Under the pieces are notes generated by a model. It saw nothing but the letters and a program-made list of their open reading frames with translations, did no database searches and was not told the DNA's origin. DNA of 64,000 nucleotides from IMG/VR virus record IMGVR_UViG_3300019458_000021, positions 173,380-237,379 of that record; one strand, given 5' to 3'. This document shows positions 10,064 through 61,423 of this stretch, piece after piece (the stretch's first letter is position 1; each line of letters starts with the position of its first letter). The translations under genes and the position numbers were made by a program.

Positions 10064-11302
10064 ATGACAACGTACGTAATCGATTTTTCGGACCCTCTTA
10101 AAGATGGGTTTTCGATCGCACCAGGTGGATTCAACGGACCTGGCGGTTCTGCCTCAAATACATCTCTCCGTCTTTACGGTCGAGGCGCACTAGAATGGGG
10201 CGAATCTGTTAACGAAGACCTCGTCCGTCTTACAGAAAACTTCAACAGCGCTACACCACCTATTACACCAGTTGACGGTATGTTGTGGTTGCGAACAAAG
10301 TACTACTGGCTCCGCACGGCAGTTGATTGGTATGTTCGTGATCCTGATTCACCTGCTGCTTGGGTATTCCTGTCAACAATTGCAACCGGTGGTGTTGTCA
10401 ACGGTGGTGCTGTAGGTACAAACGTAGCTCCAGCTCACGCGATCGGTGTGTATTGGTACACAGGTGGTGCTCCAACTGATCCTCTGACATCGAACCTTGA
10501 CGCGTTTGGTGACCCACTCACACCCACAACATTGTATCGTTGGGACTCAGCATACAAGCAAATTCCAGCCGGTTGGATGCCACAAGCATTCACACAAAAT
10601 GCAGCTGCTCCAACTGCTGCAAACTTCCCGGAGAAGAGCTTGTTGGTTTGGGACGCGTTCCAGGGTGTTAGCGGAACGTTCGTTGCTCCACCAATTTCGA
10701 TTGTTGCACCAACTCAACCAGCACAGGCAACGGAAGGTACATTGTGGTGGGATAGTGTCAACAACATTCTGTATGTGTGGAACGATTTCACGACAACATG
10801 GCAGCCATTGGTTACAGGAGGCGGTGGCGGATCTGGTGATACGACTTATCTACGTCTTGATGGCACAAACACACCAACAGCTAACCTAAACATTGGTGGC
10901 TTCCGTCTGACAAACATTACAACAAACGTAGGTGTAGCAACTGACGCTTTGAGTGTCGGTGCCGCCGATACTCGTTACGTAAACATAACCGGTGATACAA
11001 TGACTGGCGTGCTGGCGATGGGTGCATTCAACATCACCGGCCTACCTGTCATGTCTTACCCTGACTTGGTCAACACCGAGTTTGCAGCAACAAAGAACTA
11101 CGTTAATACTGCAGTCACGTCGATTACAAGCGGTGGCGGTTCGGTTACTGTTCCGTCGGTGTTTGTATCGCCAGCAGTTCCGACCTATAAGGCTGGTGAC
11201 ATCTATGTCTTGGGCGCTGTGATCTACATTGCTATCGGCGTAGGTGTAGGTGCTCCTCCGGGTGGTAACTGGCGACAAGTGTTCCCAGCACAGTACTCAT
11301 AA
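10064..11302 (+). CDS. Virion structural / tail-fibre-associated protein
   Basis: N-terminal domain shared with 24423; Gly/Thr-rich; ADTRYVNITGDTMTG and AATKNYV fibre motifs. Confidence 0.7.
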   Translation: MTTYVIDFSDPLKDGFSIAPGGFNGPGGSASNTSLRLYGRGALEWGESVNEDLVRLTENFNSATPPITPVDGMLWLRTKYYWLRTAVDWYVRDPDSPAAWVFLSTIATGGVVNGGAVGTNVAPAHAIGVYWYTGGAPTDPLTSNLDAFGDPLTPTTLYRWDSAYKQIPAGWMPQAFTQNAAAPTAANFPEKSLLVWDAFQGVSGTFVAPPISIVAPTQPAQATEGTLWWDSVNNILYVWNDFTTTWQPLVTGGGGGSGDTTYLRLDGTNTPTANLNIGGFRLTNITTNVGVATDALSVGAADTRYVNITGDTMTGVLAMGAFNITGLPVMSYPDLVNTEFAATKNYVNTAVTSITSGGGSVTVPSVFVSPAVPTYKAGDIYVLGAVIYIAIGVGVGAPPGGNWRQVFPAQYS

Positions 11303-11353: not shown

Positions 11354-12529
11354 ATGACAGGAGCTGCAGTCTCATTCTACAAGCGATCTGACGCGGGTAC
11401 ATTGCGTAAGCATACACCGTCAGCATTCAAAACAGCTCCCCTTGCAATTGCTCCTCAGCTAATGCTGACAGAGCTAATGGTGTATTTGAAGACGACTGAA
11501 ACCTGTCAACTCAACTGCGCACACTGCTTCACCAACGGAATCAACGGACGAAAAATCTACTTCGATCCAGCTCGAACAATCGATTGGTTCCATCGTCTCC
11601 ATGCAGTAAATCCAACCCTGGCGGGAGGAAGTGTCGCTTTTCATGGTGGGGAGCCAATGCTTGCTCCAATCGCCGATATGCGTCGTACATGGGAAGCGTG
11701 CAAGGATTTGTGGCCAACAGTTTGGTGGACAACAACGACAAACCTTGTATACAAACTCGACGATGAAAAGCGCCTATTCTTCAAGGAATGCTTTACAGAC
11801 GGCATCTCAACTTCTTGGGACAAGAATATCCGATTTGATAACGAAAAACAGGAAGCTCTGTGGGCTAAAAACGTCCAAACACTTCTCGATGATGGGCATA
11901 AGATCACGCTTATGGTAAGCTTAAATCGTGCGATCACTGATATGAACCCGGAAGATTTCCTGCGTTGGGTTGGTGATATCGGCGTTCACTATTTGCATCT
12001 TGAACGAATCACCCCAAATGGTAACGCAACTCGCAACCCACACATCCTTCCTTCAAATAAAGAACTCGATGCTTGGATGCTGCGATTATGGGATGCAAGT
12101 TTGAAGCTTGGCACACATAAGTACTTTGCTAATCTGTTTTTGAACGGAATTTTGTCGAGCTTTGTGTCATTAACACATTCGGGTTGTCGTTGTCGAAGTT
12201 GCGAGAAGAAGATTTTCACCCTGAACGCAGATGGAACAATTGGCGGATGTCCAAACAGTGCAGTAGACAACACGTTCGGAACAATGGAAGATGATATTTT
12301 CTCGTTGCTTAGCAGCGAGGGGCGAATCGAAAACATTGCTTGTGAAACACAACGCAATCCGCTGTGCTACACGTGCGATGTTTATGACGTTTGCAACGGT
12401 GATTGTCACCAACTTGCATGGGAAGGCGACGTTTGTGCAAGTCCGAAATCGTTGATGCGTCGATTCAAAGCAGAGAACAATAGAGAACAGTATGAGATGT
12501 TCCTTAACGGGTTCATCGGCAAGGAGTAA
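11354..12529 (+). CDS. Radical SAM/SPASM enzyme 1
   Basis: CQLNCAHC, FHGGEP, TTTNL; C-terminal CRCRSC...GC...CYTCDVYDVCNGDC...C. Confidence 0.92.
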   Translation: MTGAAVSFYKRSDAGTLRKHTPSAFKTAPLAIAPQLMLTELMVYLKTTETCQLNCAHCFTNGINGRKIYFDPARTIDWFHRLHAVNPTLAGGSVAFHGGEPMLAPIADMRRTWEACKDLWPTVWWTTTTNLVYKLDDEKRLFFKECFTDGISTSWDKNIRFDNEKQEALWAKNVQTLLDDGHKITLMVSLNRAITDMNPEDFLRWVGDIGVHYLHLERITPNGNATRNPHILPSNKELDAWMLRLWDASLKLGTHKYFANLFLNGILSSFVSLTHSGCRCRSCEKKIFTLNADGTIGGCPNSAVDNTFGTMEDDIFSLLSSEGRIENIACETQRNPLCYTCDVYDVCNGDCHQLAWEGDVCASPKSLMRRFKAENNREQYEMFLNGFIGKE

Positions 12530-12531: not shown

Positions 12532-13185
12532 ATGGCTATCGCTGGCACAGACATCACGAAAGACAATATCACTGGATCAGGTGGCGTTGACTTGAACTCG
12601 TTCAAGCAACAAATCACCGACGTTGTCAACGCACTCACAAAAACAACAAGCGTGTCCGCAAACGGGACTGCACTAGGTCAAAAGCCATTTGGTAGTGGTG
12701 CACCAATTAGTGGATCGTTGTCAAGCACCAACTATGGTGGAACACCTCCTCTGTCTGCGCCACTTGTCGCTCCTGGCACGGTGACGAATTCACCACAAGC
12801 AAGTGACATTGCAGGTGCGAACATTGCAGCAGCCACTCTGATCACATTGTTCCAAAACACAGCTGTATTACTGTCCCGTGTTCGTCGCTATTCAATGGTA
12901 AAAACATACCTTAGTCCAGCGCCTGTTATCCAACTATCACTTACAGAACCAGGCCGCTATGGTTATCTGACAACAACGTACCAAGCAAATCCAGCAACAA
13001 CAACACCAGCAATCACGACATCTTTGGCAGCTCTTACTGGCGATATTAGTGCAGCAACGTTAAACACAGTAATTGACAACGTTGACACCGCAATTACGAA
13101 CCACAGAAACACAACCGTCGCGTTCACGGAAACGTGGTGTCACTCAAGCTGTCACAGCAGTCATAGTTCAAGGAACCGTCGCTAA
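12532..13185 (+). CDS. Thr/Ser/Ala-rich protein with C-terminal (C)HSS repeats; putative substrate of the island
   Basis: Ends TWCHSSCHSSHSSRNRR and lies immediately after rSAM 1. The ORF is solid; the function is inferred. Confidence 0.7.
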   Translation: MAIAGTDITKDNITGSGGVDLNSFKQQITDVVNALTKTTSVSANGTALGQKPFGSGAPISGSLSSTNYGGTPPLSAPLVAPGTVTNSPQASDIAGANIAAATLITLFQNTAVLLSRVRRYSMVKTYLSPAPVIQLSLTEPGRYGYLTTTYQANPATTTPAITTSLAALTGDISAATLNTVIDNVDTAITNHRNTTVAFTETWCHSSCHSSHSSRNRR

Positions 13186-13949
13186 TGACCACAGTTACAA
13201 CAGAACTTCCGCTTTCAATGGACGCCTTGCGTCAGGTAATTACACAACCAGATGCAGGAGTGGTTGTTGACTACAACAACAGTAACCTCAAAGGCCGTGC
13301 AGCGCTCATTTACATGACGAATACAAACTTACCAAATGTTGCTCTGAACATGACAGATGTGTCTCTCGAAGAGAAGTTTGTACTCGTTGACGACTACATC
13401 ACTCACAAGTCAATCCTGCATGTAGCACAACTAGTCAACACCGTTTTGAATGTGTTATTCGCCGTTCGGAAAGTTGACATTGGTGCTGAACAAGACATAT
13501 TGGATCAAGTGTCGCTATTTCCACAAGAACATGTCGGCGAATATCTTGCAAATCCAACACGAGCTGAACACATCAACAAGCTGATTGAACTTCTCGACAG
13601 TCTACCTCTGTACGCTGTAACGTGTTCAACATCATTCCGCGAAGTATACGGTAAAGGAAAAGAAGCGTTTGAGCCGGTTAACGACATTGATCATACTGGT
13701 TTCACATTCGTCCACCTGTTGACTCATCCGTTGTTCCTCGAATATTTCACACAACCAGCTACGACGACACTGAAGTATTACGTTCAGCAGTTCGACGAGT
13801 ACATGTATAACGGAAAATCGTTGTTTCCATTTTTGGTAAACTCGCCTGTATTCGGTATTCTTGAGTGTTACATCACAGGGGCGGTGGACCTTGATCAGCT
13901 GCTTACAGCACACTCAGAAATGAATGCTTTGGAAGGAGCTGCAGCCTAA
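13185..13949 (+). CDS. Hypothetical protein (rSAM island)
   Basis: 254-aa ORF with TAATG overlaps at both ends. Confidence 0.8.
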   Translation: MTTVTTELPLSMDALRQVITQPDAGVVVDYNNSNLKGRAALIYMTNTNLPNVALNMTDVSLEEKFVLVDDYITHKSILHVAQLVNTVLNVLFAVRKVDIGAEQDILDQVSLFPQEHVGEYLANPTRAEHINKLIELLDSLPLYAVTCSTSFREVYGKGKEAFEPVNDIDHTGFTFVHLLTHPLFLEYFTQPATTTLKYYVQQFDEYMYNGKSLFPFLVNSPVFGILECYITGAVDLDQLLTAHSEMNALEGAAA

Positions 13950-15052
13950 TGCTACACCTGTTCAACAAGATATACGTCAAGGGAGATCATCTTGTGAAAG
14001 GTTCGCGAGATGCAATTATCATCTCGCCGACCTATGGAAATGTTCCATTTTACACGACGAAATTCTCAACTCGGGCAAACAACGAAAAAACAGGCCAACT
14101 GTGCTATTCAGCAACGTCGCTCAAAGAACTGCTCGACACTCACTTTGGTGGATCTGATGCAAAATTCTTCAATTACCTCATGAAATGGCCTGCCGAGAAA
14201 CGATTAACGATCTACGCCGATCTTCCGACAATGGTTGATATTGCAACGAGATTCTTCAAAACAGTATTCCCAAAGATGACGGAAGACACATATGTTGTGG
14301 TGATGAAGTTACTGCTCTCCCGTATCAACTACTACCTAGGCGGAGCTGTTTTGCCATTCGTAACATTAACAGAGGACCAGGCAAATTCATACCGCGTCGA
14401 AACACTTCAAATTCTTGAAGATGTTGCTGGATTGCGCCATCGATTTCAAGAAACTGCACGCTGGCGCCTGACAAAAGTGGCACGTGACAGTATCATCCGC
14501 AACTGCAGCGTTGAATACCAATTGGCGACCTATCTAACAAATCCAAAATGGGCACATGCTCGTGCGTTTGAGAAAAAGGCTGTGTCAATGGCTAAGAAGC
14601 AAATCATTCACGAATATGCTCTAGAAATTAAAGGAGCTATTGTTCGGAACTTCATGAATCTTATCGTTCTTGAACCGACAGCAACGTTCAATTCTCTGAA
14701 AGATTCACTCGAGACGTTTGTTCAACAGTTCCCTCAGTATGCATTTGTTCTCGATGATGGATTTGTGCCAGACAATGCCGAGCATATCTGGCTTAAATAC
14801 AACATGGAGGATTTGAAAACAGTGTTTGATCGCGTGACACACAAGTTCGTGTTCATTGCACAGGACTACACACCTCTGTTGAAGAAATTGACGTTCGAAG
14901 ATGTGTTGAAGTATGAGCTGGACCGGCCATATCGCTGCTTTTTGTTCAATGGTGACAACTATCAGGAAACTGTCAACTCTTACTTGATTGACTATATCCT
15001 GAATGCTTATCGGATGAACCAACACGAACAAATTCGCCAGCTGGCACTGTAA
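13949..15052 (+). CDS. Hypothetical protein, paralog A
   Basis: MLHLFNKIYVK, DAIIISP, SVEYQLATYL, VNSYLID shared with the next gene. Confidence 0.8.
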   Translation: MLHLFNKIYVKGDHLVKGSRDAIIISPTYGNVPFYTTKFSTRANNEKTGQLCYSATSLKELLDTHFGGSDAKFFNYLMKWPAEKRLTIYADLPTMVDIATRFFKTVFPKMTEDTYVVVMKLLLSRINYYLGGAVLPFVTLTEDQANSYRVETLQILEDVAGLRHRFQETARWRLTKVARDSIIRNCSVEYQLATYLTNPKWAHARAFEKKAVSMAKKQIIHEYALEIKGAIVRNFMNLIVLEPTATFNSLKDSLETFVQQFPQYAFVLDDGFVPDNAEHIWLKYNMEDLKTVFDRVTHKFVFIAQDYTPLLKKLTFEDVLKYELDRPYRCFLFNGDNYQETVNSYLIDYILNAYRMNQHEQIRQLAL

Positions 15053-15061: not shown

Positions 15062-16132
15062 ATGTTACACCTACTAAACAAAGTCTACATTAAACCAGAC
15101 GCTGATTTCCAGCGAGGTCACGATGCAATTATCATCTCTCCGAAAACGAAGCTGTTTGACAGCGAACTTTTTGGTGTGGATGACATCGACTTTGGTAAGA
15201 TCCACTTCACCGCAGAAACATTCGATGCTCTTGTCGAGGTATTTGGAAGTGAAGACGCTTTTGTACAGTGGTTGGTTTATTTCGATCCGTCGACTCGTCT
15301 GGTTGTACATTGTGATCCAGCTACATTCGAGCACATTCTGGTTCGATGGCTTAAGACGATCCTTCCAAACATGGACGGTTCGAGTTTTCACAGTCTGATT
15401 CGCATAATTTACGCTCGATACGGTTACCAGTTTGGTTATCCGTACGTTCCATTTGTTCGCCTAACACCAGACGCTGCTGCTGTGTACAAGAGCTTCTTAG
15501 CTCGTATTCCTTCAAAGGAACAAGCGGTGCAGATGTGGAATCAGGCACAGCCATACACTGTGAATGTCGATTCTGCTGCTGTAAGTTTGGAATACCAACT
15601 CGCCACATACTTGGATGATCCGACTTGGGAACATACCGACCAGCTGAAAGCAAAAGTCATCACCATGGTCAAGAAGTTTCAAGTTGGTTCACTACTCGAT
15701 GTAAAAGAAGTCATGCTTGGGCACTTGTATATGTTACCAGACTTTGATCAGTTGAAAGATACACTGGTACACTATGTTACAGAACACCTCGAATACACAT
15801 TTTTGCTGGACATGAAACTGACCTCAGACGACTACACACGATTGTACGATCAATACAATACAGCTGTACTGCGTCAGATCTACATTGATTACTTCAAAAT
15901 GCATGCGGATATTTTTGACGAGACACAAGTTGAGAAAGATCACTTCCTCGATCCTGCAATCACATTTGAACAAATCATCGACAATGAGCTAGCTTCAATC
16001 GCTACGCGACAACTGCTTGGCTCGTGGGAATATGGCCTGACAGTCAACACTTACCTGCTAGACCACCTCTTTGCGCTCGAGAGAGCGAATGACCAGGCTG
16101 AGTTGAAGAAGTTCTCGCTCCTAAGGAGTTAG
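15062..16132 (+). CDS. Hypothetical protein, paralog B
   Basis: MLHLLNKVYIK, DAIIISP, SLEYQLATYL, VNTYLLD. Confidence 0.8.
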   Translation: MLHLLNKVYIKPDADFQRGHDAIIISPKTKLFDSELFGVDDIDFGKIHFTAETFDALVEVFGSEDAFVQWLVYFDPSTRLVVHCDPATFEHILVRWLKTILPNMDGSSFHSLIRIIYARYGYQFGYPYVPFVRLTPDAAAVYKSFLARIPSKEQAVQMWNQAQPYTVNVDSAAVSLEYQLATYLDDPTWEHTDQLKAKVITMVKKFQVGSLLDVKEVMLGHLYMLPDFDQLKDTLVHYVTEHLEYTFLLDMKLTSDDYTRLYDQYNTAVLRQIYIDYFKMHADIFDETQVEKDHFLDPAITFEQIIDNELASIATRQLLGSWEYGLTVNTYLLDHLFALERANDQAELKKFSLLRS

Positions 16133-16134: not shown

Positions 16135-17172
16135 ATGAGCATGGATTTCGTAATCGACTTCAACCTTGAGCTGTTACATGGTTGCAAGTGGAACTGCACT
16201 GGCTGCAATATTGGTAAGGAAGAACAAGACGGCTTTCTTGACGGCGATTTCGATCGTTTGATGCATTTGTTTGAGGATCTCGAGCGAAACTTTCACATCC
16301 TATCAAACGTTGCAATCACACCAACCGACTTCATTGTTTCGAACAACGCAGAGCAAATTTTCGTTCCAGAACTCAAGCTCATGCTTGACAAGTTCAAGGC
16401 GGTAACATTGAACACAACATTCCTGCACGATGATGACGTGCTGGAATACTGGGCAGCCAAACTACGACCGCTCCTCAAGGGCAATACTCTGAAGTTTAGT
16501 GTTCCTGTCGAACCAGATCACTATATGAACAAGAAGTACATGGCAAAGATCCTTCACAATCGTGACTACATAGTCAGTTTGCTTCCAGAAACGAAATACA
16601 CAAAGACGTACTTGATCGGCAATTTGTACGAGTACAAGAAGTTCGTCGACTTCGAATTCTACAGCGAAGACTTTCACGATAAGTGGGATGGACACCTCGA
16701 TTTGGTGATTACAGAGGGGCGTCTTAATTTGACGAATCCGTTCAACCGTCAGCGGTTGCGTCATATGATCGAATATCAGAACGATCTTTACAATCGCTCT
16801 GTTGAACACGATCACGGCAAAATCATCGTCAACTTCACGAATGGCAAACGTCACGAAGGCTATGATAAGGACTACGTGTACAAAAACGGTCGGATCTACG
16901 CACCAGTATTCGTTGGAGAACCGCTGGTCACGTTTGAGGAAGGCTACTATCTGGATCGATCAGTTGAGTGGAACACAGACAATCTCGTTGAGTTTGAGAA
17001 TCGAATGACCGTAGAAAGCTTTGAATATCTGCCACAAACACAACACTGTGCTACCTGCGAATTTGCGAATGCGTGTGTTGCTCGTGGTCTTACCAAGTTG
17101 ATGAAAACCTTGAAAGTTACGGACTGCTTGGCACCAAAGCCGGCTTTCACGTTCTTGAGGCAGGTTGCATGA
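16135..17172 (+). CDS. Divergent radical SAM-like protein 2
   Basis: CKWNCTGC and C-terminal CATCEFANAC...C; no GGE motif. Confidence 0.75.
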   Translation: MSMDFVIDFNLELLHGCKWNCTGCNIGKEEQDGFLDGDFDRLMHLFEDLERNFHILSNVAITPTDFIVSNNAEQIFVPELKLMLDKFKAVTLNTTFLHDDDVLEYWAAKLRPLLKGNTLKFSVPVEPDHYMNKKYMAKILHNRDYIVSLLPETKYTKTYLIGNLYEYKKFVDFEFYSEDFHDKWDGHLDLVITEGRLNLTNPFNRQRLRHMIEYQNDLYNRSVEHDHGKIIVNFTNGKRHEGYDKDYVYKNGRIYAPVFVGEPLVTFEEGYYLDRSVEWNTDNLVEFENRMTVESFEYLPQTQHCATCEFANACVARGLTKLMKTLKVTDCLAPKPAFTFLRQVA

Positions 17173-18311
17173 GTCCAATCAAATTCTACCGCACGAGACC
17201 TGAACTAGAGTTCGTGCCTGATAATCGGCACATGGAATTGATCATCAAGCCTACAGAGGCATGTAACTTCAAATGCACGTTCTGCTCGAGCACGAACATC
17301 ACAGACGAAAAAGCTAAAGTCCTCGACTTAGAGTCGATCTACGCCTTCCTCAAGCGGTTCCCCAACACACACTCAATCATTGTCAATGGTGGAGATCCAT
17401 TGATGGTCAAGCCATGGTATTACTGGGAGATCATCAAATACTGCGACGACAACAACTTGCCGACAAACCTTAGCTTCACCACGAACCTATGGGCATTCTA
17501 TAAGAAACCAGAGATGTGGGTAGACCTGTTCCGACACGATCGTGTCGGTGTCACAACGTCTTTTAACTACGGTAACACACGGCGAATTACAGATGATGAA
17601 GTATTCACAGAAGATATTTTCTGGAAGGTCAGCGATAAGGTGCTAGAGTATATTGGTTATCGACCAGATTTTATCTCAGTGATTACAGACGAGAACGAAG
17701 ATACGGCAATAGATAATGTTCGTCTTGCACAGGCTATGAGTGTCGAATGTAAGCTAAACTACGCAATGGCAAGCGGAATACAAAGTGCACCATATCAATT
17801 GTCAAAGATTTATCGCACATATACAGAGATCTATGAACTAGGACTCTGGCCGTGGGAATATAATACCAAGCAGATGATGCAACGTTTGGACGGCAAAGCA
17901 TCTAGCTGTCCACAACTACGTTCCTGTGATGAAGGCATTCGATGCTTACAACCAAGTGGTGATTATTACTCATGTGGCGCATTTGGTGATGATCGAGAAT
18001 ATCCAATCAACTTCCAACAAGAAGTGATTGAAGGTAAGTTCTTCACACCGCTTCAATCAGCACCAGAATTGCTGTCACTAAAAGAAGAATGTCACACATG
18101 TCCGATGTTCAAAATTTGCAATGGATGTCGTAAGACGATCACAGACATGAAACGTCATAATGTCGTTGAGGAACATTGCACATTGATGAAGACAATCGCG
18201 AAAAAGATCATCAATATCAATGACGAATCGGCTAACTTACTAATTGATCGCACGTTAAAGAAGGGAGCTCGCAAGTATGAGCCTTGTACACTAAATACCG
18301 TTCTCGCATAA
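17169..18311 (+). CDS. Radical SAM/SPASM enzyme 3
   Basis: IKPTEACNFKCTFC, NGGDP, FTTNL; CHTCPMFKICNGC. Confidence 0.92.
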   Translation: MSPIKFYRTRPELEFVPDNRHMELIIKPTEACNFKCTFCSSTNITDEKAKVLDLESIYAFLKRFPNTHSIIVNGGDPLMVKPWYYWEIIKYCDDNNLPTNLSFTTNLWAFYKKPEMWVDLFRHDRVGVTTSFNYGNTRRITDDEVFTEDIFWKVSDKVLEYIGYRPDFISVITDENEDTAIDNVRLAQAMSVECKLNYAMASGIQSAPYQLSKIYRTYTEIYELGLWPWEYNTKQMMQRLDGKASSCPQLRSCDEGIRCLQPSGDYYSCGAFGDDREYPINFQQEVIEGKFFTPLQSAPELLSLKEECHTCPMFKICNGCRKTITDMKRHNVVEEHCTLMKTIAKKIININDESANLLIDRTLKKGARKYEPCTLNTVLA

Positions 18312-18338
18312 ATGAGCGTCGAGCCTTGGAGGACTGAT

Positions 18339-18836
18339 ATGAAGCTAACAGAAAAACAGAAAGAGGTTCGGCGACGTTATTACAAAGAGAACAGAACTGA
18401 GATTCTGGAACATCAAAAGAACCGACGCACTGCCCAGAAAAAACACATTACACAGCTCGGAAAAACATGGCGTGAAAACAACAAAGACAAAACGAAGCGA
18501 TACGGGGAAAATCACTACAAGAATCACAAAGATGATTACACCACACGCTCCAGAAGGTGGCGCGAAAACAACCCCGAGCGTAAAATATTGGCCCGGCTGC
18601 GGGCAGGAGCGAAGAAAGAGCATATTCCATTCAATCTAGAGTTGGAAGACGTCAAGATACCGAATATATGTCCAGTTTTAGGCATTGCACTTGAAAGAGG
18701 AAGGGAAGCTTTTAAGAAACTACAATGTCCGTCGGCCGATCGAATTGTTCCAAAACTTGGATACGTTCGTGGTAATGTGCGATTTATAAGTCTTCGCGCC
18801 AACTTGATTAAATCGAACCGTCGGCTGAAGAACTGA
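18339..18836 (+). CDS. HNH-like homing endonuclease with probable C-terminal frameshift
   Basis: IPNICPVLG...PSADRIVPKLGYVRGNVRFISLRANLIKS; GGAGG RBS. Confidence 0.75.
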   Translation: MKLTEKQKEVRRRYYKENRTEILEHQKNRRTAQKKHITQLGKTWRENNKDKTKRYGENHYKNHKDDYTTRSRRWRENNPERKILARLRAGAKKEHIPFNLELEDVKIPNICPVLGIALERGREAFKKLQCPSADRIVPKLGYVRGNVRFISLRANLIKSNRRLKN

Positions 18837-18881: not shown

Positions 18882-19979
18882 ATGAACCTTGCACAGCTAG
18901 TACTGCAACGCAAGCGTGATACCGATCAAGAATACACGATTCACTTGTTTGAGAAGTGCAATCTAACGTGTAATTTCTGTTGGCAAGATCACACTGCGAA
19001 TATTGGTCTGGATACTGTTCGACAAAAGATTCCAATCTTATGTGAGATGCTTGATGAAGATCCACATCACAAGTATACAATCAACATCATGGGTGGAGAG
19101 GTTTTTGCTGATGATATCTTCACGGAAAAGATGTGGGGGGATTACTACGCTCTATGCTGGTGGTCACATAAACATGTTGAGAAACTAGGGAAGGACATTA
19201 CGTTCAATTTCGTAACCAATCTCGTCACCACGAAGACAAAAGAAATTTTTGATTTGCTCCACGCATTGCGACGGGAAGGTGTTAAGGTTAAACTGACAAC
19301 GTCTTACGACGCAAAGGGTCGCTTCAATAAAGCTCAACTAGCAACGTTCAAAGAGAACATTGAAGTATTTCGTAATGAGCTTGAAGGAATCAGCATGTTG
19401 CTCACAAAGCCAGTAATCAAGCAGCTTGTTGAAGGAAAGGACGAATATTTCAAGTATCTGTACGACCAGGGGTTCTACATCTACTTCGACTACTATTCAC
19501 CAGAAGACGACTATCTGTTGGTCGGTCCATCTGATAAGGATCTGCTTAAGGCGTTCTACTTCCTGGTGGACAACTACCCGAATGTACATCCGATCAAAGA
19601 GTGGATTGAGAACCACACAAACTTCATGTCTTGTAGAAGCTCCAAACTGATCAACCCTGATGGTACGAAGTGCATGTGTGGGAATTTGCTGTTAGATAAT
19701 AAGCACGTTGTAACGTTCTTTAAGGCAAAGATACAAAAGGCTGACAACGATGAAATTGAGAACAATTTTTTGAACAGATGGGATTGTTTGTCGTGCGAAT
19801 ATTTCAGTCGTTGCACGTTGGGATGCTTCGTCCAACACGATTTCATGAAGCGCGGACAGATGAAAGAGTGCCCTTTCAAGCTGACTTTCGATAAAATCAC
19901 CAAGGGAACAGAAGTTGACATCGATCTCTTGGAAACATATTATGGGGAAGACCCTACAACTGACAATCGGGTACAGTGA
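18882..19979 (+). CDS. Radical SAM/SPASM enzyme 4
   Basis: CNLTCNFC, MGGE, FVTNL; CLSCEYFSRCTLGC...C. Confidence 0.9.
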   Translation: MNLAQLVLQRKRDTDQEYTIHLFEKCNLTCNFCWQDHTANIGLDTVRQKIPILCEMLDEDPHHKYTINIMGGEVFADDIFTEKMWGDYYALCWWSHKHVEKLGKDITFNFVTNLVTTKTKEIFDLLHALRREGVKVKLTTSYDAKGRFNKAQLATFKENIEVFRNELEGISMLLTKPVIKQLVEGKDEYFKYLYDQGFYIYFDYYSPEDDYLLVGPSDKDLLKAFYFLVDNYPNVHPIKEWIENHTNFMSCRSSKLINPDGTKCMCGNLLLDNKHVVTFFKAKIQKADNDEIENNFLNRWDCLSCEYFSRCTLGCFVQHDFMKRGQMKECPFKLTFDKITKGTEVDIDLLETYYGEDPTTDNRVQ

Positions 19980-20409
19980 TCTATATATTGCACAAGTACT
20001 CCAGCACAGTATTCGTCGTCGTGCATCAATTGGCACAGATTTTCGTTTTGTGTTGCGTGTGTCGAATGTAGTAGAATCACCGCTTCTGTGGAACTATGAG
20101 GGAGATTGGTCAATCTTCCTCGACGCGAAAATGCTTTGTTTGTGCGACATAAAGGAACTTACGGAACATTTCGACCCGCAATACGCCGTTCAGTTTGTTA
20201 AGTTCGCTGAACAACCATTGGCTGTAGTTGTATTCAATCACAACAAATTTGGCCGAACACCCGATCTCCATGACAAAGAAATTGGAGACCTGCCTTCAGA
20301 GTTTAACAGCGAATTCCCAACAGCAAAAATTCTTCGGTACGACAACGACCCATACAACTCTCAACTTTGGAAAGATGAACTCGATGACATGCTCCGAACT
20401 TACAGTTGA
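19942..20409 (+). CDS. Degenerate glycosyltransferase (GT-A/GT8-like) protein
   Basis: IGY...SIRRRAS...NYEGDWSIFLDAKML..CDIKEL resembles phage GT-A proteins; the DxD position reads DAK. Confidence 0.45.
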   Translation: MGKTLQLTIGYSDLYIAQVLQHSIRRRASIGTDFRFVLRVSNVVESPLLWNYEGDWSIFLDAKMLCLCDIKELTEHFDPQYAVQFVKFAEQPLAVVVFNHNKFGRTPDLHDKEIGDLPSEFNSEFPTAKILRYDNDPYNSQLWKDELDDMLRTYS

Positions 20410-21244
20410 GAACTTCATCTCCCAGCAATGGATCCATAAAAATCGCTACGTACTTAACGCAAGAACAGTGACACCTGAATGTGTTGAGTCCTTGAACGCA
20501 CAGGCATTCAAACGATTCCAGTTATCAAATCATCAACGCAAATACTCGAAGTCGCCAATTCGAATCGATATCTGTGAGTGGCTAGAACGTCGGGCGTCAT
20601 TCTCTCTACATGAATACGACTACACAATTCCACCAGGGTATGTAACGCCAATTGAGTTTTTTAGCGAGGCGCAGCCATGGCGAATGCTGTTGCTTTCTTT
20701 CGATCCATATGCGTCAATCCTGCAGCGAAAGCTGTTCACCGATGCACGATTCGTTGAACGTGCATACGAAGAAAAGGACGATATGTATTCACCGAAATCG
20801 TTCCTGTTGGAACAGATTGAACTTGGATGGCTTGGCTACAGCGAATTTGAAGACTGTATTTTCATTCACCACATACAAGTGCGAGGTGCACTCAAAGAAG
20901 GAATGCGATACAATGACCTTGTTTGGTTCTATAGATACTTGGTTCGTGCATTTACGCAGATGTTGCCCGAAGGGAAGTTGAAGCATGTGTACGCACCAGA
21001 TGCAGCAACGTTGTCGCTGTACAGCGAACGTCTGGTCGGGAATGCGTCAATAGTACTTCCGTATTCGCGGCATGTGCTACGAAAGAGCGACTTTCATACG
21101 GTTGGCTGGGACGCGTTTGCAACACAATCACCAATCGCGGCGGCTAAATGCAAGATGCGTGATGTGTTACTGCCAGACGAGATAACACTTTGGAGATACG
21201 ATTATAATGATCCACACACTTTGGCACGACAGAATTCTGATTGA
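20375..21244 (+). CDS. Hypothetical protein (rSAM island)
   Basis: Long ORF overlapping both neighbours; start uncertain. Confidence 0.7.
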   Translation: MNSMTCSELTVENFISQQWIHKNRYVLNARTVTPECVESLNAQAFKRFQLSNHQRKYSKSPIRIDICEWLERRASFSLHEYDYTIPPGYVTPIEFFSEAQPWRMLLLSFDPYASILQRKLFTDARFVERAYEEKDDMYSPKSFLLEQIELGWLGYSEFEDCIFIHHIQVRGALKEGMRYNDLVWFYRYLVRAFTQMLPEGKLKHVYAPDAATLSLYSERLVGNASIVLPYSRHVLRKSDFHTVGWDAFATQSPIAAAKCKMRDVLLPDEITLWRYDYNDPHTLARQNSD

Positions 21245-21809
21245 AGACGATTTGCTTGACCCGCAAGGCTGGAGTAATTTTCGAGACTGGGTCGGAGTGG
21301 AATTTGGTCGTCGACAGACAAAACCAATTATGTCAATCGACCATCTCAACTTGCCACCTGAACTCGGTTACTACGCAGCCATGCTTGACGGTGCCGTGAC
21401 AAACTATTGCGAAGCTTGTGGCATAGACTATGCAATGGATATTGTAAACCTACAGGCAACTTGGGTTGAGAATTACAACGAAACAAGTCACCATGAATTC
21501 GTACATGAACCACATCACGACCTTTCGGAAGGTGGCTATCTTGTTGCTGTGTATTATGTATGTACAGATGTGAATTCACTAACAAGATTTGTTGGGGGAG
21601 ACCTGGCGATATACAAGGCACTGACATATAGTGAATACCCCGAGGGAATGGTTCACGTTCGTGCAATACCGAACCGGTTGGTTGTTTTTCCTGCTATGCT
21701 TTACCATCGCATCAAACCATACTTCGGTCGTTCCCCACGAATTGCATTGTCGGCTGTGTTGTCTAAATCAGCCGACACAGTTCAAAACAAGAGAGTTTGC
21801 ACACTATGA
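21207..21809 (+). CDS. 2OG-Fe(II) oxygenase
   Basis: HHD...VYY...GGDL...NRLVVFPAMLYHRI...R (HxD...H...R). Confidence 0.85.
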   Translation: MIHTLWHDRILIEDDLLDPQGWSNFRDWVGVEFGRRQTKPIMSIDHLNLPPELGYYAAMLDGAVTNYCEACGIDYAMDIVNLQATWVENYNETSHHEFVHEPHHDLSEGGYLVAVYYVCTDVNSLTRFVGGDLAIYKALTYSEYPEGMVHVRAIPNRLVVFPAMLYHRIKPYFGRSPRIALSAVLSKSADTVQNKRVCTL

Positions 21810-22441
21810 ACTTCTACAAATTGTGGGCGTATCCAATTTACACATGCGAAAACGTTCTCCTCGACACCGAACGTCAGCAGGTGGCCGACTATGTGCTACA
21901 TCGATTCAAAGATCTGGACGACGACAAAATAGTCAACGTTCACGTTGCTGTTGATGGCGAGTTGGACAAAATTCCAAGCGATCTAAAGCTGTTGTATTAC
22001 GCATTGTATGTGAAGTTTTCTCAATATGTCTTCGAATGCGGAAATCCTCTTGAAGAGTACTTTCTTCACAGGATTGCTATGAATAAGACTCGCGCATTCG
22101 TTCCAGGACGAGACGAAGGTGTGATTTATGAATTGCACGCGGACGATAGCGTGAATGACATTACATGCGTCTACTACGCTCAAATCGATACAGTACACGC
22201 TAATGGTGGTAGTGCCGGCGGCGACCTGCGAATCTACAACCGAGCGGTGCTCGACACAACCGATGATACACGCGAAGCGTATGTCACTTGCAAACCAGTT
22301 GACAATAAAGCAGTAATGTTCCCGGGCAGTTTGATTCACGAGGTTCGTCCATATTTTGGTGAGCGTCCTCGAGTTAGTCTAAACTACAAGTTTCGTCGTT
22401 ACCGCAGGAACATCTCTTTGAAACCAAAGCTGGTAATATGA
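21806..22441 (+). CDS. 2OG-Fe(II) oxygenase
   Basis: HAD...VYY...GGDL...MFPGSLIHEV...RVS. Confidence 0.85.
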   Translation: MNFYKLWAYPIYTCENVLLDTERQQVADYVLHRFKDLDDDKIVNVHVAVDGELDKIPSDLKLLYYALYVKFSQYVFECGNPLEEYFLHRIAMNKTRAFVPGRDEGVIYELHADDSVNDITCVYYAQIDTVHANGGSAGGDLRIYNRAVLDTTDDTREAYVTCKPVDNKAVMFPGSLIHEVRPYFGERPRVSLNYKFRRYRRNISLKPKLVI

Positions 22442-23382
22442 AACCAGTCACTCTATCAATCAATCCACTGTATCTGTGCAACTTTCGGTGCAAGTTTTGT
22501 TATCTAACACCAGAACAACTTGCAGACAAGAAGAAAATCGATCATGTCCGTCTTGACCAAATGCTCTCTGAGGTCACAATGGTTACGGCAATCCAACACG
22601 TTGACTTGTACGGTGGAGAAATTGCACTGCTTTCCGATGAGTACTTTGATGATATGAAGCGGATCATCCGACAGTACTACTACAAGCCGATCAACGTTGT
22701 CACTAACCTGTCGAGAGTTCCGAAATTTTTCATGCCACCTGACATTCAATTGTCCGTGAGTTTTGATTTCGATTGTCGCGAACGGTACGAAGAAGTGTAC
22801 AGAAACATGGCAACTGTTCAGAAGCCGCTGCATGTTCTGGTTTTAGCTAGCAGGTGCTTAATCGACAAAGACGTCGACTACATGATTATGATGCTGAACA
22901 CATTACAAAATGTTCGGACAGTTGAGATCAAACCGTATAGCACGAATCAAGCAAACCAACATACCGTGTCGCACGCAGACTTCGAACGATTCGTTAAACG
23001 TTGGTTGACGAGTCGGATTCCAAAACGATTTGCGTTTATCAACGAGCAGAAGATTATCGAAGCGCTTCGCGGATCGTACAACGCATTTAGTGATGACCAT
23101 GTCTATATCACCCCTAATGGCAAGTTTGCGGTGCTTGATTTCGACGAGAGCGATCACGAGAAGTTCACAGAGCTCGACCACTTTGTGGACTATGTCCGGT
23201 GGACAGAACATGAGAAACAACTAATCGGAAGCAATTCATACTGCCAAACCTGTCCATATTTCGGTCACTGTTTGACAGAACACTATCGTTGGGTGAAAGA
23301 TCTCGAAAACTCGTGCAATGGTTACAGGTTCCTTTTGGATTGGTGCAATGAAAGAATGGAAAATCCGGCAGCAAATCTATGA
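22438..23382 (+). CDS. Radical SAM enzyme 5
   Basis: CNFRCKFCY, YGGE, VTNL; CQTCPYFGHC...C. Confidence 0.9.
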   Translation: MKPVTLSINPLYLCNFRCKFCYLTPEQLADKKKIDHVRLDQMLSEVTMVTAIQHVDLYGGEIALLSDEYFDDMKRIIRQYYYKPINVVTNLSRVPKFFMPPDIQLSVSFDFDCRERYEEVYRNMATVQKPLHVLVLASRCLIDKDVDYMIMMLNTLQNVRTVEIKPYSTNQANQHTVSHADFERFVKRWLTSRIPKRFAFINEQKIIEALRGSYNAFSDDHVYITPNGKFAVLDFDESDHEKFTELDHFVDYVRWTEHEKQLIGSNSYCQTCPYFGHCLTEHYRWVKDLENSCNGYRFLLDWCNERMENPAANL

Positions 23383-23776
23383 TCGTACGTGGCACGACCA
23401 CGATGACTTGGTCTGCCATTCAAAGATCATTGACACCAGTGAACTGGGATTTGATCCCAGCTTTGCAGGCAAAGTTGGTTCATATTTTATGTGGGAATGG
23501 GATGTTCTCGTCTATCCGGAGAAGTCGTATGCAGTTGCAATGGTTTACGCAAAACTGCTCGAGAAATACTTCGGTGAGAACTTCTATGAGGTGTTAGACG
23601 ATCAAGATTTGTTGCTTGGCGACAAGTACTTTGTTCGCTACAGCAAAAACAAAGAATGGTACGACAAGTTGATCGCAACTATGGACGAATGGAAATTGTG
23701 GGACTTTGAAAACAGCAAGTTACCGCAGGTTCAGGCGACCATCACGTACTTTAAGAAGGAGTTTCAGCTGATCTAA
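23348..23776 (+). CDS. Hypothetical protein (end of rSAM island)
   Basis: ORF overlapping rSAM 5. Confidence 0.7.
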   Translation: MKEWKIRQQIYDRTWHDHDDLVCHSKIIDTSELGFDPSFAGKVGSYFMWEWDVLVYPEKSYAVAMVYAKLLEKYFGENFYEVLDDQDLLLGDKYFVRYSKNKEWYDKLIATMDEWKLWDFENSKLPQVQATITYFKKEFQLI

Positions 23777-23818: not shown

Positions 23819-24397
23819 ATGAAACGCTGCACTTGCTCACTACACGAGGGAACAAATCCTCTCCCCATTTCATTCTTCACCAAAGACGCATCGACCTCTG
23901 ATAGCCTATCCCGACTGTGTCGACTTTGTTCTCAACGACGCTCCGCGGAAATACGAAATAGACGCAGAAAGAAACAACAAACGCTCACGAGAGAGCGATA
24001 CAAAAACGATCCAATGTTTCGAGCGAAAGCTTTGGCTAGCTCTCGGTCCTACCAGCGCAGAAGACTTGCTGAAGACCCTATGTATGCACACAAATTGGAG
24101 ATGTGGAGGAACGCACGATCGCGCGCTGTACGAAAAGGTCTAACATTCACAATAACAGTCGACGACATAAGCATCCCTCAGCGTTGCCCCATTCTTGATC
24201 TTCCGTTGACGCGAAATCAGGGCAGGCGAGGTCCAACGGAGGAATCTCCGACACTCGATAGAATTGATCCAAAGCACGGCTACGTTCCTGGAAATGTCAT
24301 CGTGATCAGCATGCGGGCGAACACCATCAAAAGTTTTGGTACGCCAGAAGAACACTTCAAGATTTACCGGTTTCTATCACAGTTGACTCAGAGATAA
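23819..24397 (+). CDS. HNH-like homing endonuclease
   Basis: N-terminal Cys knuckle; IPQRCPIL...PTLDRIDPKHGYVPGNVIVISMRANTIKS. Confidence 0.8.
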   Translation: MKRCTCSLHEGTNPLPISFFTKDASTSDSLSRLCRLCSQRRSAEIRNRRRKKQQTLTRERYKNDPMFRAKALASSRSYQRRRLAEDPMYAHKLEMWRNARSRAVRKGLTFTITVDDISIPQRCPILDLPLTRNQGRRGPTEESPTLDRIDPKHGYVPGNVIVISMRANTIKSFGTPEEHFKIYRFLSQLTQR

Positions 24398-59750: not shown

Positions 59751-60275
59751 AATAATTACTCCCCAAAAAACTTATTTAGATTTTTTTGTGGAATTGCTTT
59801 TGGGTGAATTTTCGGCTTAAAAAATTTCAACGGCGGTTTTGACAAACACCAAACCTATATTACACCGGCGCCGAGCATCGCCACCTCAAAGATTTCCTTT
59901 CGCCTACGCCTTAGAGGACTTCGTTTGTTGTCAAACGTTTAGGGGAGCCCGATGCTTAGACCTTGCGGCCAACGGCCAGCGGTCTTGATGTCAATACCAG
60001 TGATCATCCTTCGTACACTGCTCCCTGTGCCGGTGGCGTTGCCTTTCAGAACGATCCGTGTCATTACTCGGCCGGCTGCTGGTGGGTGCGCTCCAGGCAG
60101 CTGCCGAACTTCGAGTTCGCCATGCTGGAGGCGAACAGGCCGACGGCCTTCGCCTAACACTTCGATGTGCCATCATCCGCCTTCAGCGTGATCTGGGACA
60201 TGGCACAGCCAGCCAGAAGGATGGTGATGGCAATGATCATTGCTGCTTTCATTTGTTTATTCCTTGTTCCAGTTG

Positions 60276-60358
60276 GGGTATTGTACGCCGATCGGACTTA
60301 GTTGGCAACTACATCTCGCCAGCCGTCCGTTTCTCGCAGGCTAGTCGTTCTTTCTGGA
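60276..60358. repeat. ~83-bp direct repeat, copy 1 (gene end plus promoter)
   Basis: Nearly identical to 61424-61507. Confidence 0.95.
60280..60308 (-). promoter_or_regulatory. sigma70-like early promoter
   Basis: TTGCCA-N17-TACAAT. Confidence 0.7.
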
Positions 60359-60743
60359 ACGCTGTCGCTGGGTCGCTGTATTCGTCGTACACTCGCAGGA
60401 CGAAGTCCCACAGCCCTTCTTCGCCGATCTTGTTGAACCATGCTTGCACGACTGGGCCCAGGATGTCGCTCTCGACGAACTCAGCTTCCGTTGTCGACAT
60501 CCACAGCAGGTCAAACGCGACTAGCGTGATGTCACGAGAATGCCCCTTGCTTTTCCACTGCACGACGTGGTTTGCGGTCAGCCCGGTCACGCCACACTCG
60601 TTCACCAGGCCGGTGGGGATCTCCCCGTCCGCATGCGCTCGAGGCATCAAGATCAAGCACAGCGCCCCAACCAAGACAAACGCCGCAAGCGCGAGCACGA
60701 TTGTGTTGACGATCCGTTCCATACTACTTCGCCTTGCGCGCAT
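60309..60743 (-). CDS. Secreted/membrane hypothetical protein
   Basis: Signal-like N-terminus (AHA-D). Confidence 0.65.
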   Translation of the reverse strand: MRARRSSMERIVNTIVLALAAFVLVGALCLILMPRAHADGEIPTGLVNECGVTGLTANHVVQWKSKGHSRDITLVAFDLLWMSTTEAEFVESDILGPVVQAWFNKIGEEGLWDFVLRVYDEYSDPATAFQKERLACEKRTAGEM

Positions 60744-61194: not shown

Positions 61195-61397
61195 TGTTGT
61201 CCCAATTTAATGAAAGGTTTGTACGTCGCAACGAGCCGCATCAGATGTATTCCGATGATCCACATGCACACCAGCTGCCATCCTGCGACTTGATTGAACC
61301 GCTGCTTGACGATCGTGTTGATGAGGCAGCCACTAACCAGGAGCAAATTGAACGACCAGATCATCACTGCGAACATGTCCGATCTGAAGAAATCCAC
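61191..61397 (-). CDS. Small membrane protein
   Basis: Two hydrophobic segments; AGGAG RBS. Confidence 0.55.
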   Translation of the reverse strand: MDFFRSDMFAVMIWSFNLLLVSGCLINTIVKQRFNQVAGWQLVCMWIIGIHLMRLVATYKPFIKLGQQ

Positions 61398-61423
61398 TTC
61401 AAGCTCCTGTTGTCACACTGATA

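What the first reader, a model, noticed from the sequence alone, without database searches (positions are those of the whole stretch)
12532..13185. Structural-looking 217-aa protein with a His-Xaa-Ser core-like tail (WCHSSCHSSHSSRNRR)
Seen: both Cys, the only Trp and three of the four His lie in the last 16 residues. The three HSS units use different codons (cac tca agc / cac agc agt / cat agt tca), so they are maintained at protein level rather than by slippage. Known: His-Xaa-Ser repeats mark the HxsA precursor family, and aromatic-X-X motifs (WxH, HxS) are substrates for cyclophane-forming rSAMs; Cys could form thioethers. Inferred: this is a precursor with a very long, T/S/A/G-rich, virion-like leader, i.e. 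a RiPP core fused to a structural protein.
Basis: partly seen in the sequence, partly recalled or inferred. Interest (0 to 1): 0.9.

Follow-up and report, generated by a model that had tools for sequence, protein, structure and literature searches.

The report
Phage protein tail made for radical-SAM enzymes
The Cys/His/Ser-rich end of this phage protein is the hallmark of a large, undescribed protein family that almost always sits beside radical-SAM enzymes in giant phages and predatory bacteria, so it is very probably a site of enzymatic cross-linking, although its purpose is unknown.

Summary
ORF 12532-13185 encodes 217 aa ending WCHSSCHSSHSSRNRR; six of its seven Cys/Trp/His lie in the last 16 residues (P about 4e-7).

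The tail is the only strongly conserved part of a large family: 193 clusters at 50% identity, at least 120 viral contigs and 37 genome contigs. Consensus: (C-H-x-[S/N]) x2-6, R-x-R-R, stop. The window lineage has lost the third Cys.

The gene is translationally coupled to an upstream radical SAM/SPASM gene and a downstream orphan gene (p254). An rSAM gene is directly adjacent in 84 of 118 viral loci and elsewhere in the locus in 24 more. Clusters hold 3-7 rSAM genes plus 2OG/cupin oxygenases. The module occurs in cultured jumbo phages (Atu_ph07, Phosso, RSL2/RSF1, FLC6/8, pPa_SNUABM_DT01) and in Bdellovibrionota chromosomes.

The body is a globular alpha/beta domain with no known structural relative, not a fibre. 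It is not an HxsA family member, and no enzyme is orthologous to HxsB/C or to known cyclophane synthases.

Best reading (about 0.65): a protein-sized rSAM substrate whose C-terminal tail is cross-linked. The chemistry and biological role remain inferred. I judge it a new variant of a known kind.

The parts
11354..12529 (+). rSAM1: radical SAM/SPASM enzyme encoded immediately upstream. It is the presumed primary maturase of the tail.
   Evidence: It has CX3CX2C at residue 51 and the SPASM motif CX2CX5CX3C at residue 338. All cluster cysteines are conserved in 79 orthologs. It matches phrog_1802 at 2e-57. Matches to anSME, DynA, DarE and other NCBIfam models are weak and far below their cut-offs. 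A profile search against the PDB finds anSME over nearly the full length at about 3e-6. Its stop codon lies 2 nt before the tail gene's ATG.
12532..13185 (+). The tail protein (217 aa): a globular alpha/beta body plus a C-terminal tail.
   Evidence: The AF2 model has pLDDT 81 and pTM 0.80. There is no match in Pfam, NCBIfam or PADLOC.
13138..13182 (+). Tail coding segment, residues 203-217: C-H-S-S-C-H-S-S-H-S-S-R-N-R-R. This is the conserved core motif.
   Evidence: C203, H204, C207, H208, H211, R214, R216 and R217 are invariant across ten phage lineages. The family consensus is C-H-[SGATN]-[SN] x2-6 followed by R-x-R-R. The segment is extended and low-confidence in the model.
13185..13949 (+). 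p254: an orphan core partner (phrog_20767). Its ATG overlaps the tail gene's stop codon (TAATG).
   Evidence: It matches phrog_20767 at 1e-35. It lies directly downstream of the tail gene in most loci. The AF2 model has pLDDT 93.8 and is mostly helical, with no fold match in the PDB. No Pfam or PDB sequence match was found.
13949..15052 (+). p367a: an orphan partner (phrog_36207).
   Evidence: It is 28% identical to p367b. There is no Pfam or PDB match. It has a weak PADLOC PDC-S05 hit at 7.5e-7.
15062..16132 (+). p367b: a paralog of p367a.
16135..17172 (+). rSAM-like protein with CX3CX2C at residue 17 and no SPASM motif (phrog_31457).
   Evidence: Orthologs occur in 23 viral and 11 genome loci. 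It is absent from the close relative L001.
17169..18311 (+). Radical SAM enzyme (phrog_1802). Its likely ATG at 17169 overlaps the previous gene's stop codon.
   Evidence: It matches Pfam Radical_SAM at 9e-9 and phrog_1802 at 9e-54. CX3CX2C is present.
18882..19979 (+). Radical SAM/SPASM enzyme (phrog_1802).
   Evidence: It has CX3CX2C and CX2CX5CX3C. Orthologs occur in 62 viral and 18 genome loci.
19951..20409 (+). Small conserved cluster gene of unknown function.
   Evidence: It is homologous to the 224-aa gene of L001.
20450..21244 (+). Conserved cluster gene of unknown function.
   Evidence: It is 45% identical to the 265-aa gene of L001.
21207..21809 (+). 2OG-Fe(II) oxygenase-like protein.
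   Evidence: It gives a weak match to Pfam 2OG-FeII_Oxy_5 and matches phrog_81.
21797..22441 (+). 2OG-Fe(II) oxygenase.
   Evidence: It matches Pfam 2OG-FeII_Oxy_3 and Oxy_5 above their cut-offs.
22438..23382 (+). Radical SAM enzyme (phrog_1802).
   Evidence: Orthologs occur in 27 viral and 11 genome loci.
23318..23776 (+). phrog_20737 protein, the last conserved gene of the cluster.
   Evidence: It is found in 17 viral and 7 genome loci.

Best explanation
The 217-aa ORF is the substrate protein of a multi-enzyme radical-SAM maturation cassette. Its family-specific globular domain acts as the handle, taking the place of a leader peptide. It presents a flexible C-terminal tail, (C-H-x-[S/N]) repeated n times followed by R-x-R-R, to the SPASM enzyme encoded immediately upstream (rSAM1). 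The further rSAM paralogs and the 2OG/cupin oxygenases of the cluster probably act on it afterwards. The most likely outcome is a set of small intramolecular cross-links within each unit. One candidate is a His-C2 to C-beta link to the Ser/Asn two residues on, as in triceptides and plausibly HxsA. The other is a Cys thioether. Either would give a rigid, polycationic and possibly metal-binding C-terminal module that stays attached to the protein, since the cassette has no recognisable protease or exporter. What is shown: the motif, its conservation, the operon structure, the co-occurrence, and the integrity of the SPASM enzyme. What is inferred: that the tail is modified at all, which atoms are linked, and the biological role.
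For: (1) The tail is invariant while the bodies diverge to 17-22% identity. Across 153 family representatives, 441 of 510 Cys and 469 of 705 His lie in the last 24 residues. (2) The genes are tightly coupled. The rSAM1 stop codon is 2 nt from the tail gene's ATG, and the tail gene's stop overlaps the p254 ATG. The order rSAM1-TAIL-p254-p367 recurs in metagenomic relatives, in five groups of cultured jumbo phages, in 118 viral loci and in 37 genome loci. An rSAM gene is directly adjacent in 84 of the 118 viral loci and elsewhere in the locus in 24 more. In GenBank phages, rSAM1 and p254 hit exactly the same 15 records. (3) The family shows features typical of rSAM precursors. Tail genes are tandemly duplicated in front of one rSAM in 23 loci. 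Repeat number varies from 2 to 6. The tail is predicted to be extended and disordered, directly after the last beta-strand. (4) rSAM1 is an intact SPASM enzyme with all cluster cysteines conserved. Its distant relatives are all protein- or peptide-modifying enzymes: anSME, DynA, DarE, PapB, YhhB and ChlB. (5) Where Cys is lost, as in the window lineage and in P0151, the repeat period drops from 4 to 3 and H-x-[S/N] is kept. This points to H-x-[S/N] as the essential unit. rSAM/SPASM enzymes are known to cross-link His-C2 to C-beta of residue +2 (HaaB and HtkB; PMC11499958). An H-x-S unit is the mapped modification site in HxsA (PMC13128918). (6) Codon data show selection acting on the protein sequence, not on the DNA or RNA.
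Against: There is no direct evidence of modification, and no proteomic or mass-spectrometric data exist for any family member. No RiPP recognition element (PqqD-like domain), protease or transporter was detected in the cassette. A Cys/His-rich tail could simply bind metal. rSAM1 has no close characterised relative, so the chemistry cannot be transferred from a known enzyme. The many other rSAMs could act on a different substrate. A 190-aa folded 'leader' is unusual for rSAM substrates.
Confidence: 0.65

Rival explanations
1. The tail is an unmodified Cys/His metal site binding Zn, Fe, Cu or a small Fe-S cluster. The protein would serve the neighbouring enzymes as a metal or Fe-S donor or as an electron carrier, or it would use the metal for its own function.
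For: The tail has alternating Cys and His with three to six potential ligands, and all Cys of the protein lie there. The neighbouring rSAM/SPASM enzymes each need up to three [4Fe-4S] clusters and a reductant (established knowledge). No protease or RiPP recognition element was found.
Against: Repeat number varies from 2 to 6, and Cys can be lost while H-x-[S/N] is retained. That is not expected of a defined metal site. The strongly conserved Ser/Asn at the fourth position and the R-x-R-R end are not explained by metal binding. Carrier proteins normally have a conserved body, whereas here the body is the fastest-evolving part. Tandem duplicated copies look like precursor genes.
Confidence: 0.17
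2. It is a classical RiPP precursor. After modification the roughly 15-residue tail is cleaved off and released as a small bioactive or metal-binding peptide, and the 200-aa body is only a leader.
For: The evidence is the same genetic evidence as for the best explanation. Long leader domains exist in other RiPP classes, for example the nitrile-hydratase-like leaders (own knowledge). Small tandem precursors of about 126 aa occur in 23 loci.
Against: No protease or exporter was recognised in any version of the cassette. The body has a conserved, confidently predicted fold with a nearly invariant Arg118, which suggests it functions in the mature product. A lytic phage has little obvious need to secrete a peptide.
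Confidence: 0.1
3. It is a virion or tail-fibre accessory protein whose Cys/His tail coordinates metal on an oligomer axis, as the HxH motifs do in phage fibres and spikes. Under this reading the rSAM genes nearby are unrelated.
For: In the window the cluster lies between tail-fibre-like genes. The protein has a T/S/A/G-rich composition. Two relatives carry long beta-rich insertions.
Against: The predicted fold is globular, not fibrous. The fibre neighbourhood is not conserved: 2 of 120 viral loci and 0 genome loci. The family also lies in Bdellovibrionota chromosomes next to housekeeping genes. The rSAM linkage is far too consistent to be coincidental. The homologs in RSL2 and Atu_ph07 are annotated as hypothetical proteins, while neighbouring genes are annotated as virion proteins.
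Confidence: 0.06

Closest known systems
HXS anti-phage system (HxsA effector with HxsB/HxsC rSAM enzymes and HxsD; PMC13128918)
   Same: Both involve a protein-sized substrate rather than a short peptide. Both carry tandem H-x-S units in a basic context and are matured by more than one rSAM/SPASM enzyme. In HxsA the modification was mapped to an S-H-R-S-S unit, and the product remains a protein.
   Different: There is no sequence membership: 0 of 54 members hit the HxsA model, and the rSAMs score 32 bits against an HxsC cut-off of 268. The phage protein has no signal peptide or peptidoglycan-binding domain. Here the units are usually preceded by Cys, sit at the extreme C-terminus, and end in R-x-R-R. 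The cassettes hold 3-7 rSAMs plus oxygenases and the orphan p254 and p367 proteins. The carriers are jumbo phages and Bdellovibrionota, whereas 99.7% of HXS systems are in Pseudomonadota.
Triceptides / three-residue cyclophane-forming rSAM enzymes (XyeB, YhhB, ChlB, HaaB, HtkB; PMC11499958)
   Same: Both have repeated aromatic-X-X units, including His-X-X, in the C-terminal part of a precursor encoded next to an rSAM/SPASM enzyme. The residue at position 3 is small or polar. Repeat number varies between members.
   Different: The maturases are not members of the characterised 3-CyFE families: XyeB at E 1.8e-3, YhhB at 2.6e-5, and ChlB matching only the N-terminal core. The precursor is a folded protein of 125-380 aa. 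A conserved Cys lies in each unit. Many rSAM paralogs are present.
Anaerobic sulfatase-maturating enzyme (anSME) acting on sulfatases
   Same: It is the only solved structure that aligns with rSAM1 over nearly its full length and the best NCBIfam hit. It acts on a whole protein without a leader peptide, at a Cys or Ser located four residues before an Arg. That spacing also occurs in the last C-H-x-S-R unit of the three-Cys tails.
   Different: rSAM1 scores 42 bits against a cut-off of 349. The defining Pro/Ala at position +2 is absent. The units are tandemly repeated. In the window lineage the corresponding position is Ser or Asn, and Asn cannot be converted to formylglycine.
Sactipeptide, ranthipeptide and QhpC-type Cys thioether formation by SPASM enzymes
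   Same: Both involve Cys-rich cores modified by SPASM enzymes. QhpC is a protein subunit that is cross-linked and then retained in the mature enzyme (own knowledge).
   Different: No membership was found in the PapB, RumMC, SCIFF or QhpD models. Cys is dispensable in some units of this family.

Membership tests
HxsA / HXS system | The precursor matches the HxsA (His-Xaa-Ser repeat protein) family model. | tested here: not met
   The window protein has no NCBIfam hit. None of 54 family members hits the HxsA model at E <= 0.1.
HxsA / HXS system | Tandem His-Xaa-Ser repeats are present. | tested here: met
   The window tail has three H-S-S units. The family unit is H-x-[S/N], with S 315, N 86 and A 18 at the last position.
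HxsA / HXS system | The partner rSAMs are HxsB and HxsC equivalogs, and a small HxsD protein is present. | tested here: not met
   The best HxsC score is 32.4 bits against a cut-off of 267.9, covering the N-terminal core only. There is no HxsB hit, and no neighbour hits HxsD.
HxsA / HXS system | The effector has a signal peptide and a peptidoglycan-binding domain (PMC13128918). | tested here: not met
   No Pfam domain was found. The N-terminus is hydrophilic, with a maximum 12-residue Kyte-Doolittle mean of 0.59.
Triceptides (3-CyFE systems) | The precursor has aromatic-X-X motifs and is encoded next to an rSAM/SPASM enzyme. | tested here: met
   The tail has H-x-S three times, and W-C-H occurs in the window lineage. 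rSAM1 is adjacent.
Triceptides (3-CyFE systems) | The maturase belongs to a characterised cyclophane-synthase family (XyeB, YhhB, ChlB and others). | tested here: not met
   Scores are XyeB 17 bits against a cut-off of 450 and YhhB 23 bits against 445. ChlB (9gm3) matches profile positions 5-96 only, at E 1.7e-5.
Triceptides (3-CyFE systems) | A cross-link from the aromatic carbon to C-beta, seen as a loss of 2 Da per motif. | not testable with these tools
   This needs LC-MS/MS and NMR of co-expressed protein.
Radical SAM / SPASM subfamily (for rSAM1) | A CX3CX2C motif plus a C-terminal SPASM cysteine motif CX2CX5CX3C, with flanking Cys for two auxiliary clusters. | tested here: met
   Both motifs are present and are conserved in 79 orthologs. 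The TIGR04085 SPASM domain scores 23.7 bits, just under its cut-off of 27.
Anaerobic sulfatase maturase system | The enzyme is a TIGR03942 equivalog, and the substrate carries a (C/S)-x-(P/A)-x-R motif. | tested here: not met
   The enzyme scores 42 bits against a cut-off of 349. The tail has no Pro or Ala at position +2 in most units.
Classical leader-dependent RiPP cluster | A short precursor, a PqqD-like recognition element, and a protease and/or transporter in the cluster. | tested here: not met
   Precursors are 125-380 aa. No RiPP recognition element, peptidase or ABC-transporter domain was found among the cluster genes scanned.
Phage tail-fibre / virion structural protein | A fibrous or otherwise known structural fold, a structural PHROG assignment, and a conserved position in the structural module. 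| tested here: not met
   The predicted fold is globular alpha/beta. The only PHROG hit is phrog_35144, of unknown function, at E 0.009. The fibre neighbourhood is not conserved. Virion proteomics could not be consulted.

The most novel reading that the evidence does not exclude
Jumbo phages and predatory Bdellovibrionota share an offensive or competitive counterpart of the bacterial HXS defence. In this reading a cassette of up to seven radical-SAM enzymes plus oxygenases builds a new type of polycyclic, Cys/His-derived, polycationic C-terminal 'warhead' or protein-derived cofactor on a dedicated carrier protein. The product would be used during attack on Gram-negative cells, for example to exclude rival phages, bind nucleic acid or envelope components, or capture metal.
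Probability: 0.25. Interest if true: 0.9.

Novelty: new variant of a known kind. Interest (0 to 1): 0.75.

Why it matters
Radical-SAM maturation of whole proteins is rare, and the HXS defence system of 2026 is one of the few characterised examples. This finding defines a much larger, unannotated system with a very clear substrate signature. It is conserved from 220-kb phiKZ-like phages to 490-kb T4-like phages and extends into the chromosomes of predatory bacteria. It comes with two confidently folded proteins of unknown fold (the tail-protein body and p254) and up to seven rSAM paralogs. That combination points to new enzyme chemistry and a so far unrecognised function in giant-phage biology. 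Several cultured phages carry the cassette, so the question is directly testable.

Tried and rejected
- **Close phage relatives.** Megablast of the cluster and tblastn of the window protein against GenBank phages found nothing. Relatives were reached only through the rSAM1 and p254 genes.
- **Family libraries.** Pfam, NCBIfam and PADLOC gave no family for the tail protein, p254 or p367.
- **Structure.** PDB sequence searches and Foldseek gave no relative for the tail-protein body or for p254. BFVD returned only uncharacterised members of the same family.
- **Locus search.** I replaced it with a degenerate DNA pattern.
- **Other tails in the window.** No second protein with a similar tail was found in the window.
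- **rSAM paralogs.** The window's rSAM paralogs show no pairwise BLAST similarity, so no paralog tree was attempted.
- **Heme-c reading.** I considered reading C-x3-C-H as a heme-c attachment motif and rejected it. The protein is cytoplasmic with no signal peptide, and no heme-attachment (cytochrome c maturation) gene is recognisable in the cluster.
- **Tail-fibre association.** This was tested and rejected.
- **Other tail-protein types.** The small tandem type and the 257-aa type have no cultured representative.
- **Chance genome hits.** Ten genome hits, mostly in high-GC isolates, have no ORF ending in the motif and were set aside as chance matches.
- **Literature.** Searches found no description of the family.

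Full report
**Observation.** The ORF at 12532-13185 (+) is real. It encodes 217 aa from an ATG start and is preceded by an AAGGAG ribosome-binding site. It ends W-C-H-S-S-C-H-S-S-H-S-S-R-N-R-R. Both Cys (203, 207), the only Trp (202) and three of the four His (204, 208, 211) lie in the last 16 residues. The chance of six of these seven residues falling there is about 4e-7.

**Conservation.** Five close homologs from metagenomes are 37-64% identical overall but keep the last 27 residues almost unchanged. Through the neighbouring genes I found the syntenic proteins of cultured jumbo phages: Atu_ph07 gp170, the Phosso protein, RSL2 ORF068 and a pPa_SNUABM_DT01 protein. Their bodies are only 17-22% identical to the window protein. 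All nevertheless end in C-H-x-x-C-H-x-x-C-H-x-x-R-x-R-R followed by a stop codon.

A profile search of 1.84 billion representative proteins found 193 clusters at E <= 1e-3. Among the 153 sequences inspected:
- 141 end in R-x-R-R;
- 113 have three tandem C-H-x-x units, 33 have two and 4 have four;
- the unit is C-H-[S/G/A/T/N]-[S/N];
- 441 of 510 Cys and 469 of 705 His lie in the last 24 residues.

The window lineage is a derived form that lacks the third Cys. In it, and in one relative with a single Cys, the repeat period drops from 4 to 3 and H-x-[S/N] is retained. Synonymous codon variation is unrestricted: Ser uses both AGY and TCN, Arg uses both AGR and CGN, and there are 120 distinct DNA versions among 141 tails. 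Selection therefore acts on the peptide, not on a DNA repeat or an RNA element.

**Genomic context.** The gene sits in a cassette running from 11354 to about 23776 on the + strand. In order it contains:
- rSAM1, a radical SAM/SPASM enzyme;
- the tail protein;
- p254;
- two p367 paralogs;
- an rSAM-like gene;
- three further rSAM genes;
- two small conserved genes;
- two 2OG-Fe(II) oxygenases;
- a phrog_20737 protein.

Two HNH endonuclease ORFs interrupt the cassette. The rSAM1 stop codon lies 2 nt before the tail gene's ATG, and the tail gene's stop overlaps the p254 ATG. The same gene order is found in metagenomic relatives and in the cultured phages.

My estimate of the chance expectation is below 0.1. 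Of the 118 loci with a tail ORF, an rSAM gene is immediately upstream in 77, immediately downstream in 7 and elsewhere in the fetched stretch in 24. The rest are truncated or rearranged. A second architecture has two tandem tail genes of about 126 aa followed by an rSAM, p254 and three to six more rSAMs. One locus has seven rSAM genes in a row. In GenBank phages, rSAM1 and p254 hit exactly the same 15 records.

**Presence outside phages.** The same pattern hit 47 stretches in the species-representative genome collection. Thirty-seven have a genuine tail ORF with rSAM1, p254 and p367 neighbours, and about 25 of those are Bdellovibrionota. Three lie on contigs of 1.3, 2.4 and 2.8 Mb. One of these is next to lspA, a housekeeping gene. 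The module is therefore also chromosomal in predatory bacteria. Ten hits, mostly in high-GC isolates, lack an ORF ending in the motif and are chance matches.

**The proteins.**
- *rSAM1* has CX3CX2C and a complete SPASM motif, with every cluster cysteine conserved in 79 orthologs. Its best relatives are all distant. anSME is the only solved structure aligned over nearly the full length (E about 3e-6). DynA, DarE, PapB, YhhB, ChlB and SuiB match more weakly.
- *The tail-protein body* is predicted with good confidence (pLDDT 81, pTM 0.80) to be a compact alpha/beta domain. Its last strand (residues 195-203) runs straight into an extended, low-confidence tail. It has no structural relative in the PDB. 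In BFVD it matches only uncharacterised family members.
- *p254* folds with pLDDT 93.8 and also has no structural or sequence relative.
- *p367* is likewise an orphan family.

Between close relatives the enzymes are 75-85% identical, whereas the tail-protein body, p254 and p367 are only 41-64% identical.

**Interpretation.** Four features are the signature of a precursor-maturase relationship: an invariant, flexible, repeat-built C-terminal tail; strict operonic linkage to an intact SPASM enzyme; tandem gene duplication; and variable repeat number. I conclude, at about 0.65, that the tail is the substrate of rSAM1 and probably of further cassette enzymes.

The chemistry is inferred only. The retention of H-x-[S/N] when Cys is lost favours a triceptide-type link from His-C2 to C-beta of residue +2. 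That reaction is documented for HaaB and HtkB (PMC11499958). A related modification maps to an S-H-R-S-S unit in HxsA (PMC13128918). The near-universal Cys equally allows thioether formation, and several reactions by the different rSAM paralogs are plausible. No protease or exporter is recognisable and the body has a conserved fold, so the product most likely remains a protein.

The main rival, at about 0.17, is a plain Cys/His metal or Fe-S site that serves the neighbouring enzymes. Cleavage into a free RiPP (about 0.1) and a virion-fibre role (about 0.06) are less likely. The tail-fibre neighbourhood seen in the window is not conserved elsewhere.

**Comparison with known systems.** Functionally the closest system is the HXS defence system. 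Membership fails on every sequence criterion tested. The family is also not a member of the characterised triceptide, anSME, sactipeptide or ranthipeptide families. Published phage papers list these genes only as accessory genes of unknown role, and literature searches found no description of the family. I classify it as a new variant of a known kind, namely rSAM/SPASM maturation of a ribosomal product. Its distinguishing features are its size, its multi-rSAM cassette, its orphan partners and its distribution in giant phages and bacterial predators.

**Verdict.** The HxsA family label and the 'structural protein' label are not supported. Interest is 0.75.

Noticed in passing
L155 (CBDEUB010000002.1, 2.84 Mb), L176 (2.45 Mb), L153 (1.29 Mb) and about 20 other Bdellovibrionota contigs: The whole cassette (tail protein, rSAM1, p254, p367 and 2OG oxygenases) is chromosomal in predatory Bdellovibrionota. 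In L155 it lies beside lspA. I did not determine whether it sits in a prophage-like island.
   Followed up: partly
window 18312-18836 and 23819-24397: Two HNH/endonuclease VII-like ORFs (phrog_3322, phrog_1035) lie inside and at the end of the cassette. They have no counterpart in the close relative L001, so they are probably homing-endonuclease insertions.
   Followed up: partly
L013, L038, L047, L056, L066 and others (23 viral loci); L150, L160, L177: An alternative architecture has two tandem tail genes of about 126 aa, followed by an rSAM, p254 and three to six more rSAM genes. No cultured phage carries this type.
   Followed up: partly
L045:290-8878: Seven consecutive radical-SAM genes lie downstream of a 257-aa tail protein.
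   Followed up: no
L161 (Dysosmobacter segnis contig, 4.3 kb): The tail has six C-H-x-x units in two blocks of three separated by a short spacer. This is the longest version seen.
   Followed up: no
L123:2225-10453 and L042:38-3232: In two loci the tail gene directly follows a giant ORF (2742 aa and 1064 aa) instead of rSAM1.
   Followed up: no
window 13949-15052: p367a gives a weak hit (E 7.5e-7, residues 137-257) to the PADLOC candidate defence family PDC-S05. Its meaning is unknown.
   Followed up: no
window 10064-11302 and 24423-26708: The two genes flanking the cassette are tail-fibre-like and share an N-terminal motif (phrog_14394, phrog_15511, phrog_18671). L001 has the same upstream gene.
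   Followed up: partly
window 31062-33287: A 741-aa protein carries multiple RCC1-like repeats (phrog_7220 at 8e-72). It follows a 1444-aa protein with a tail-fibre C-terminal domain (26718-31052).
   Followed up: no
window 60001-64000: GC content rises to 0.52-0.56, compared with 0.41-0.50 in the rest of the window.
   Followed up: no
L009 (Atu_ph07 gp172), L010 (RSL2 ORF066), L011 (PA10_00067): In the cultured phages a cupin/JmjC-like gene lies directly upstream of rSAM1. The window has a tail-fibre-like gene at that position instead.
   Followed up: partly
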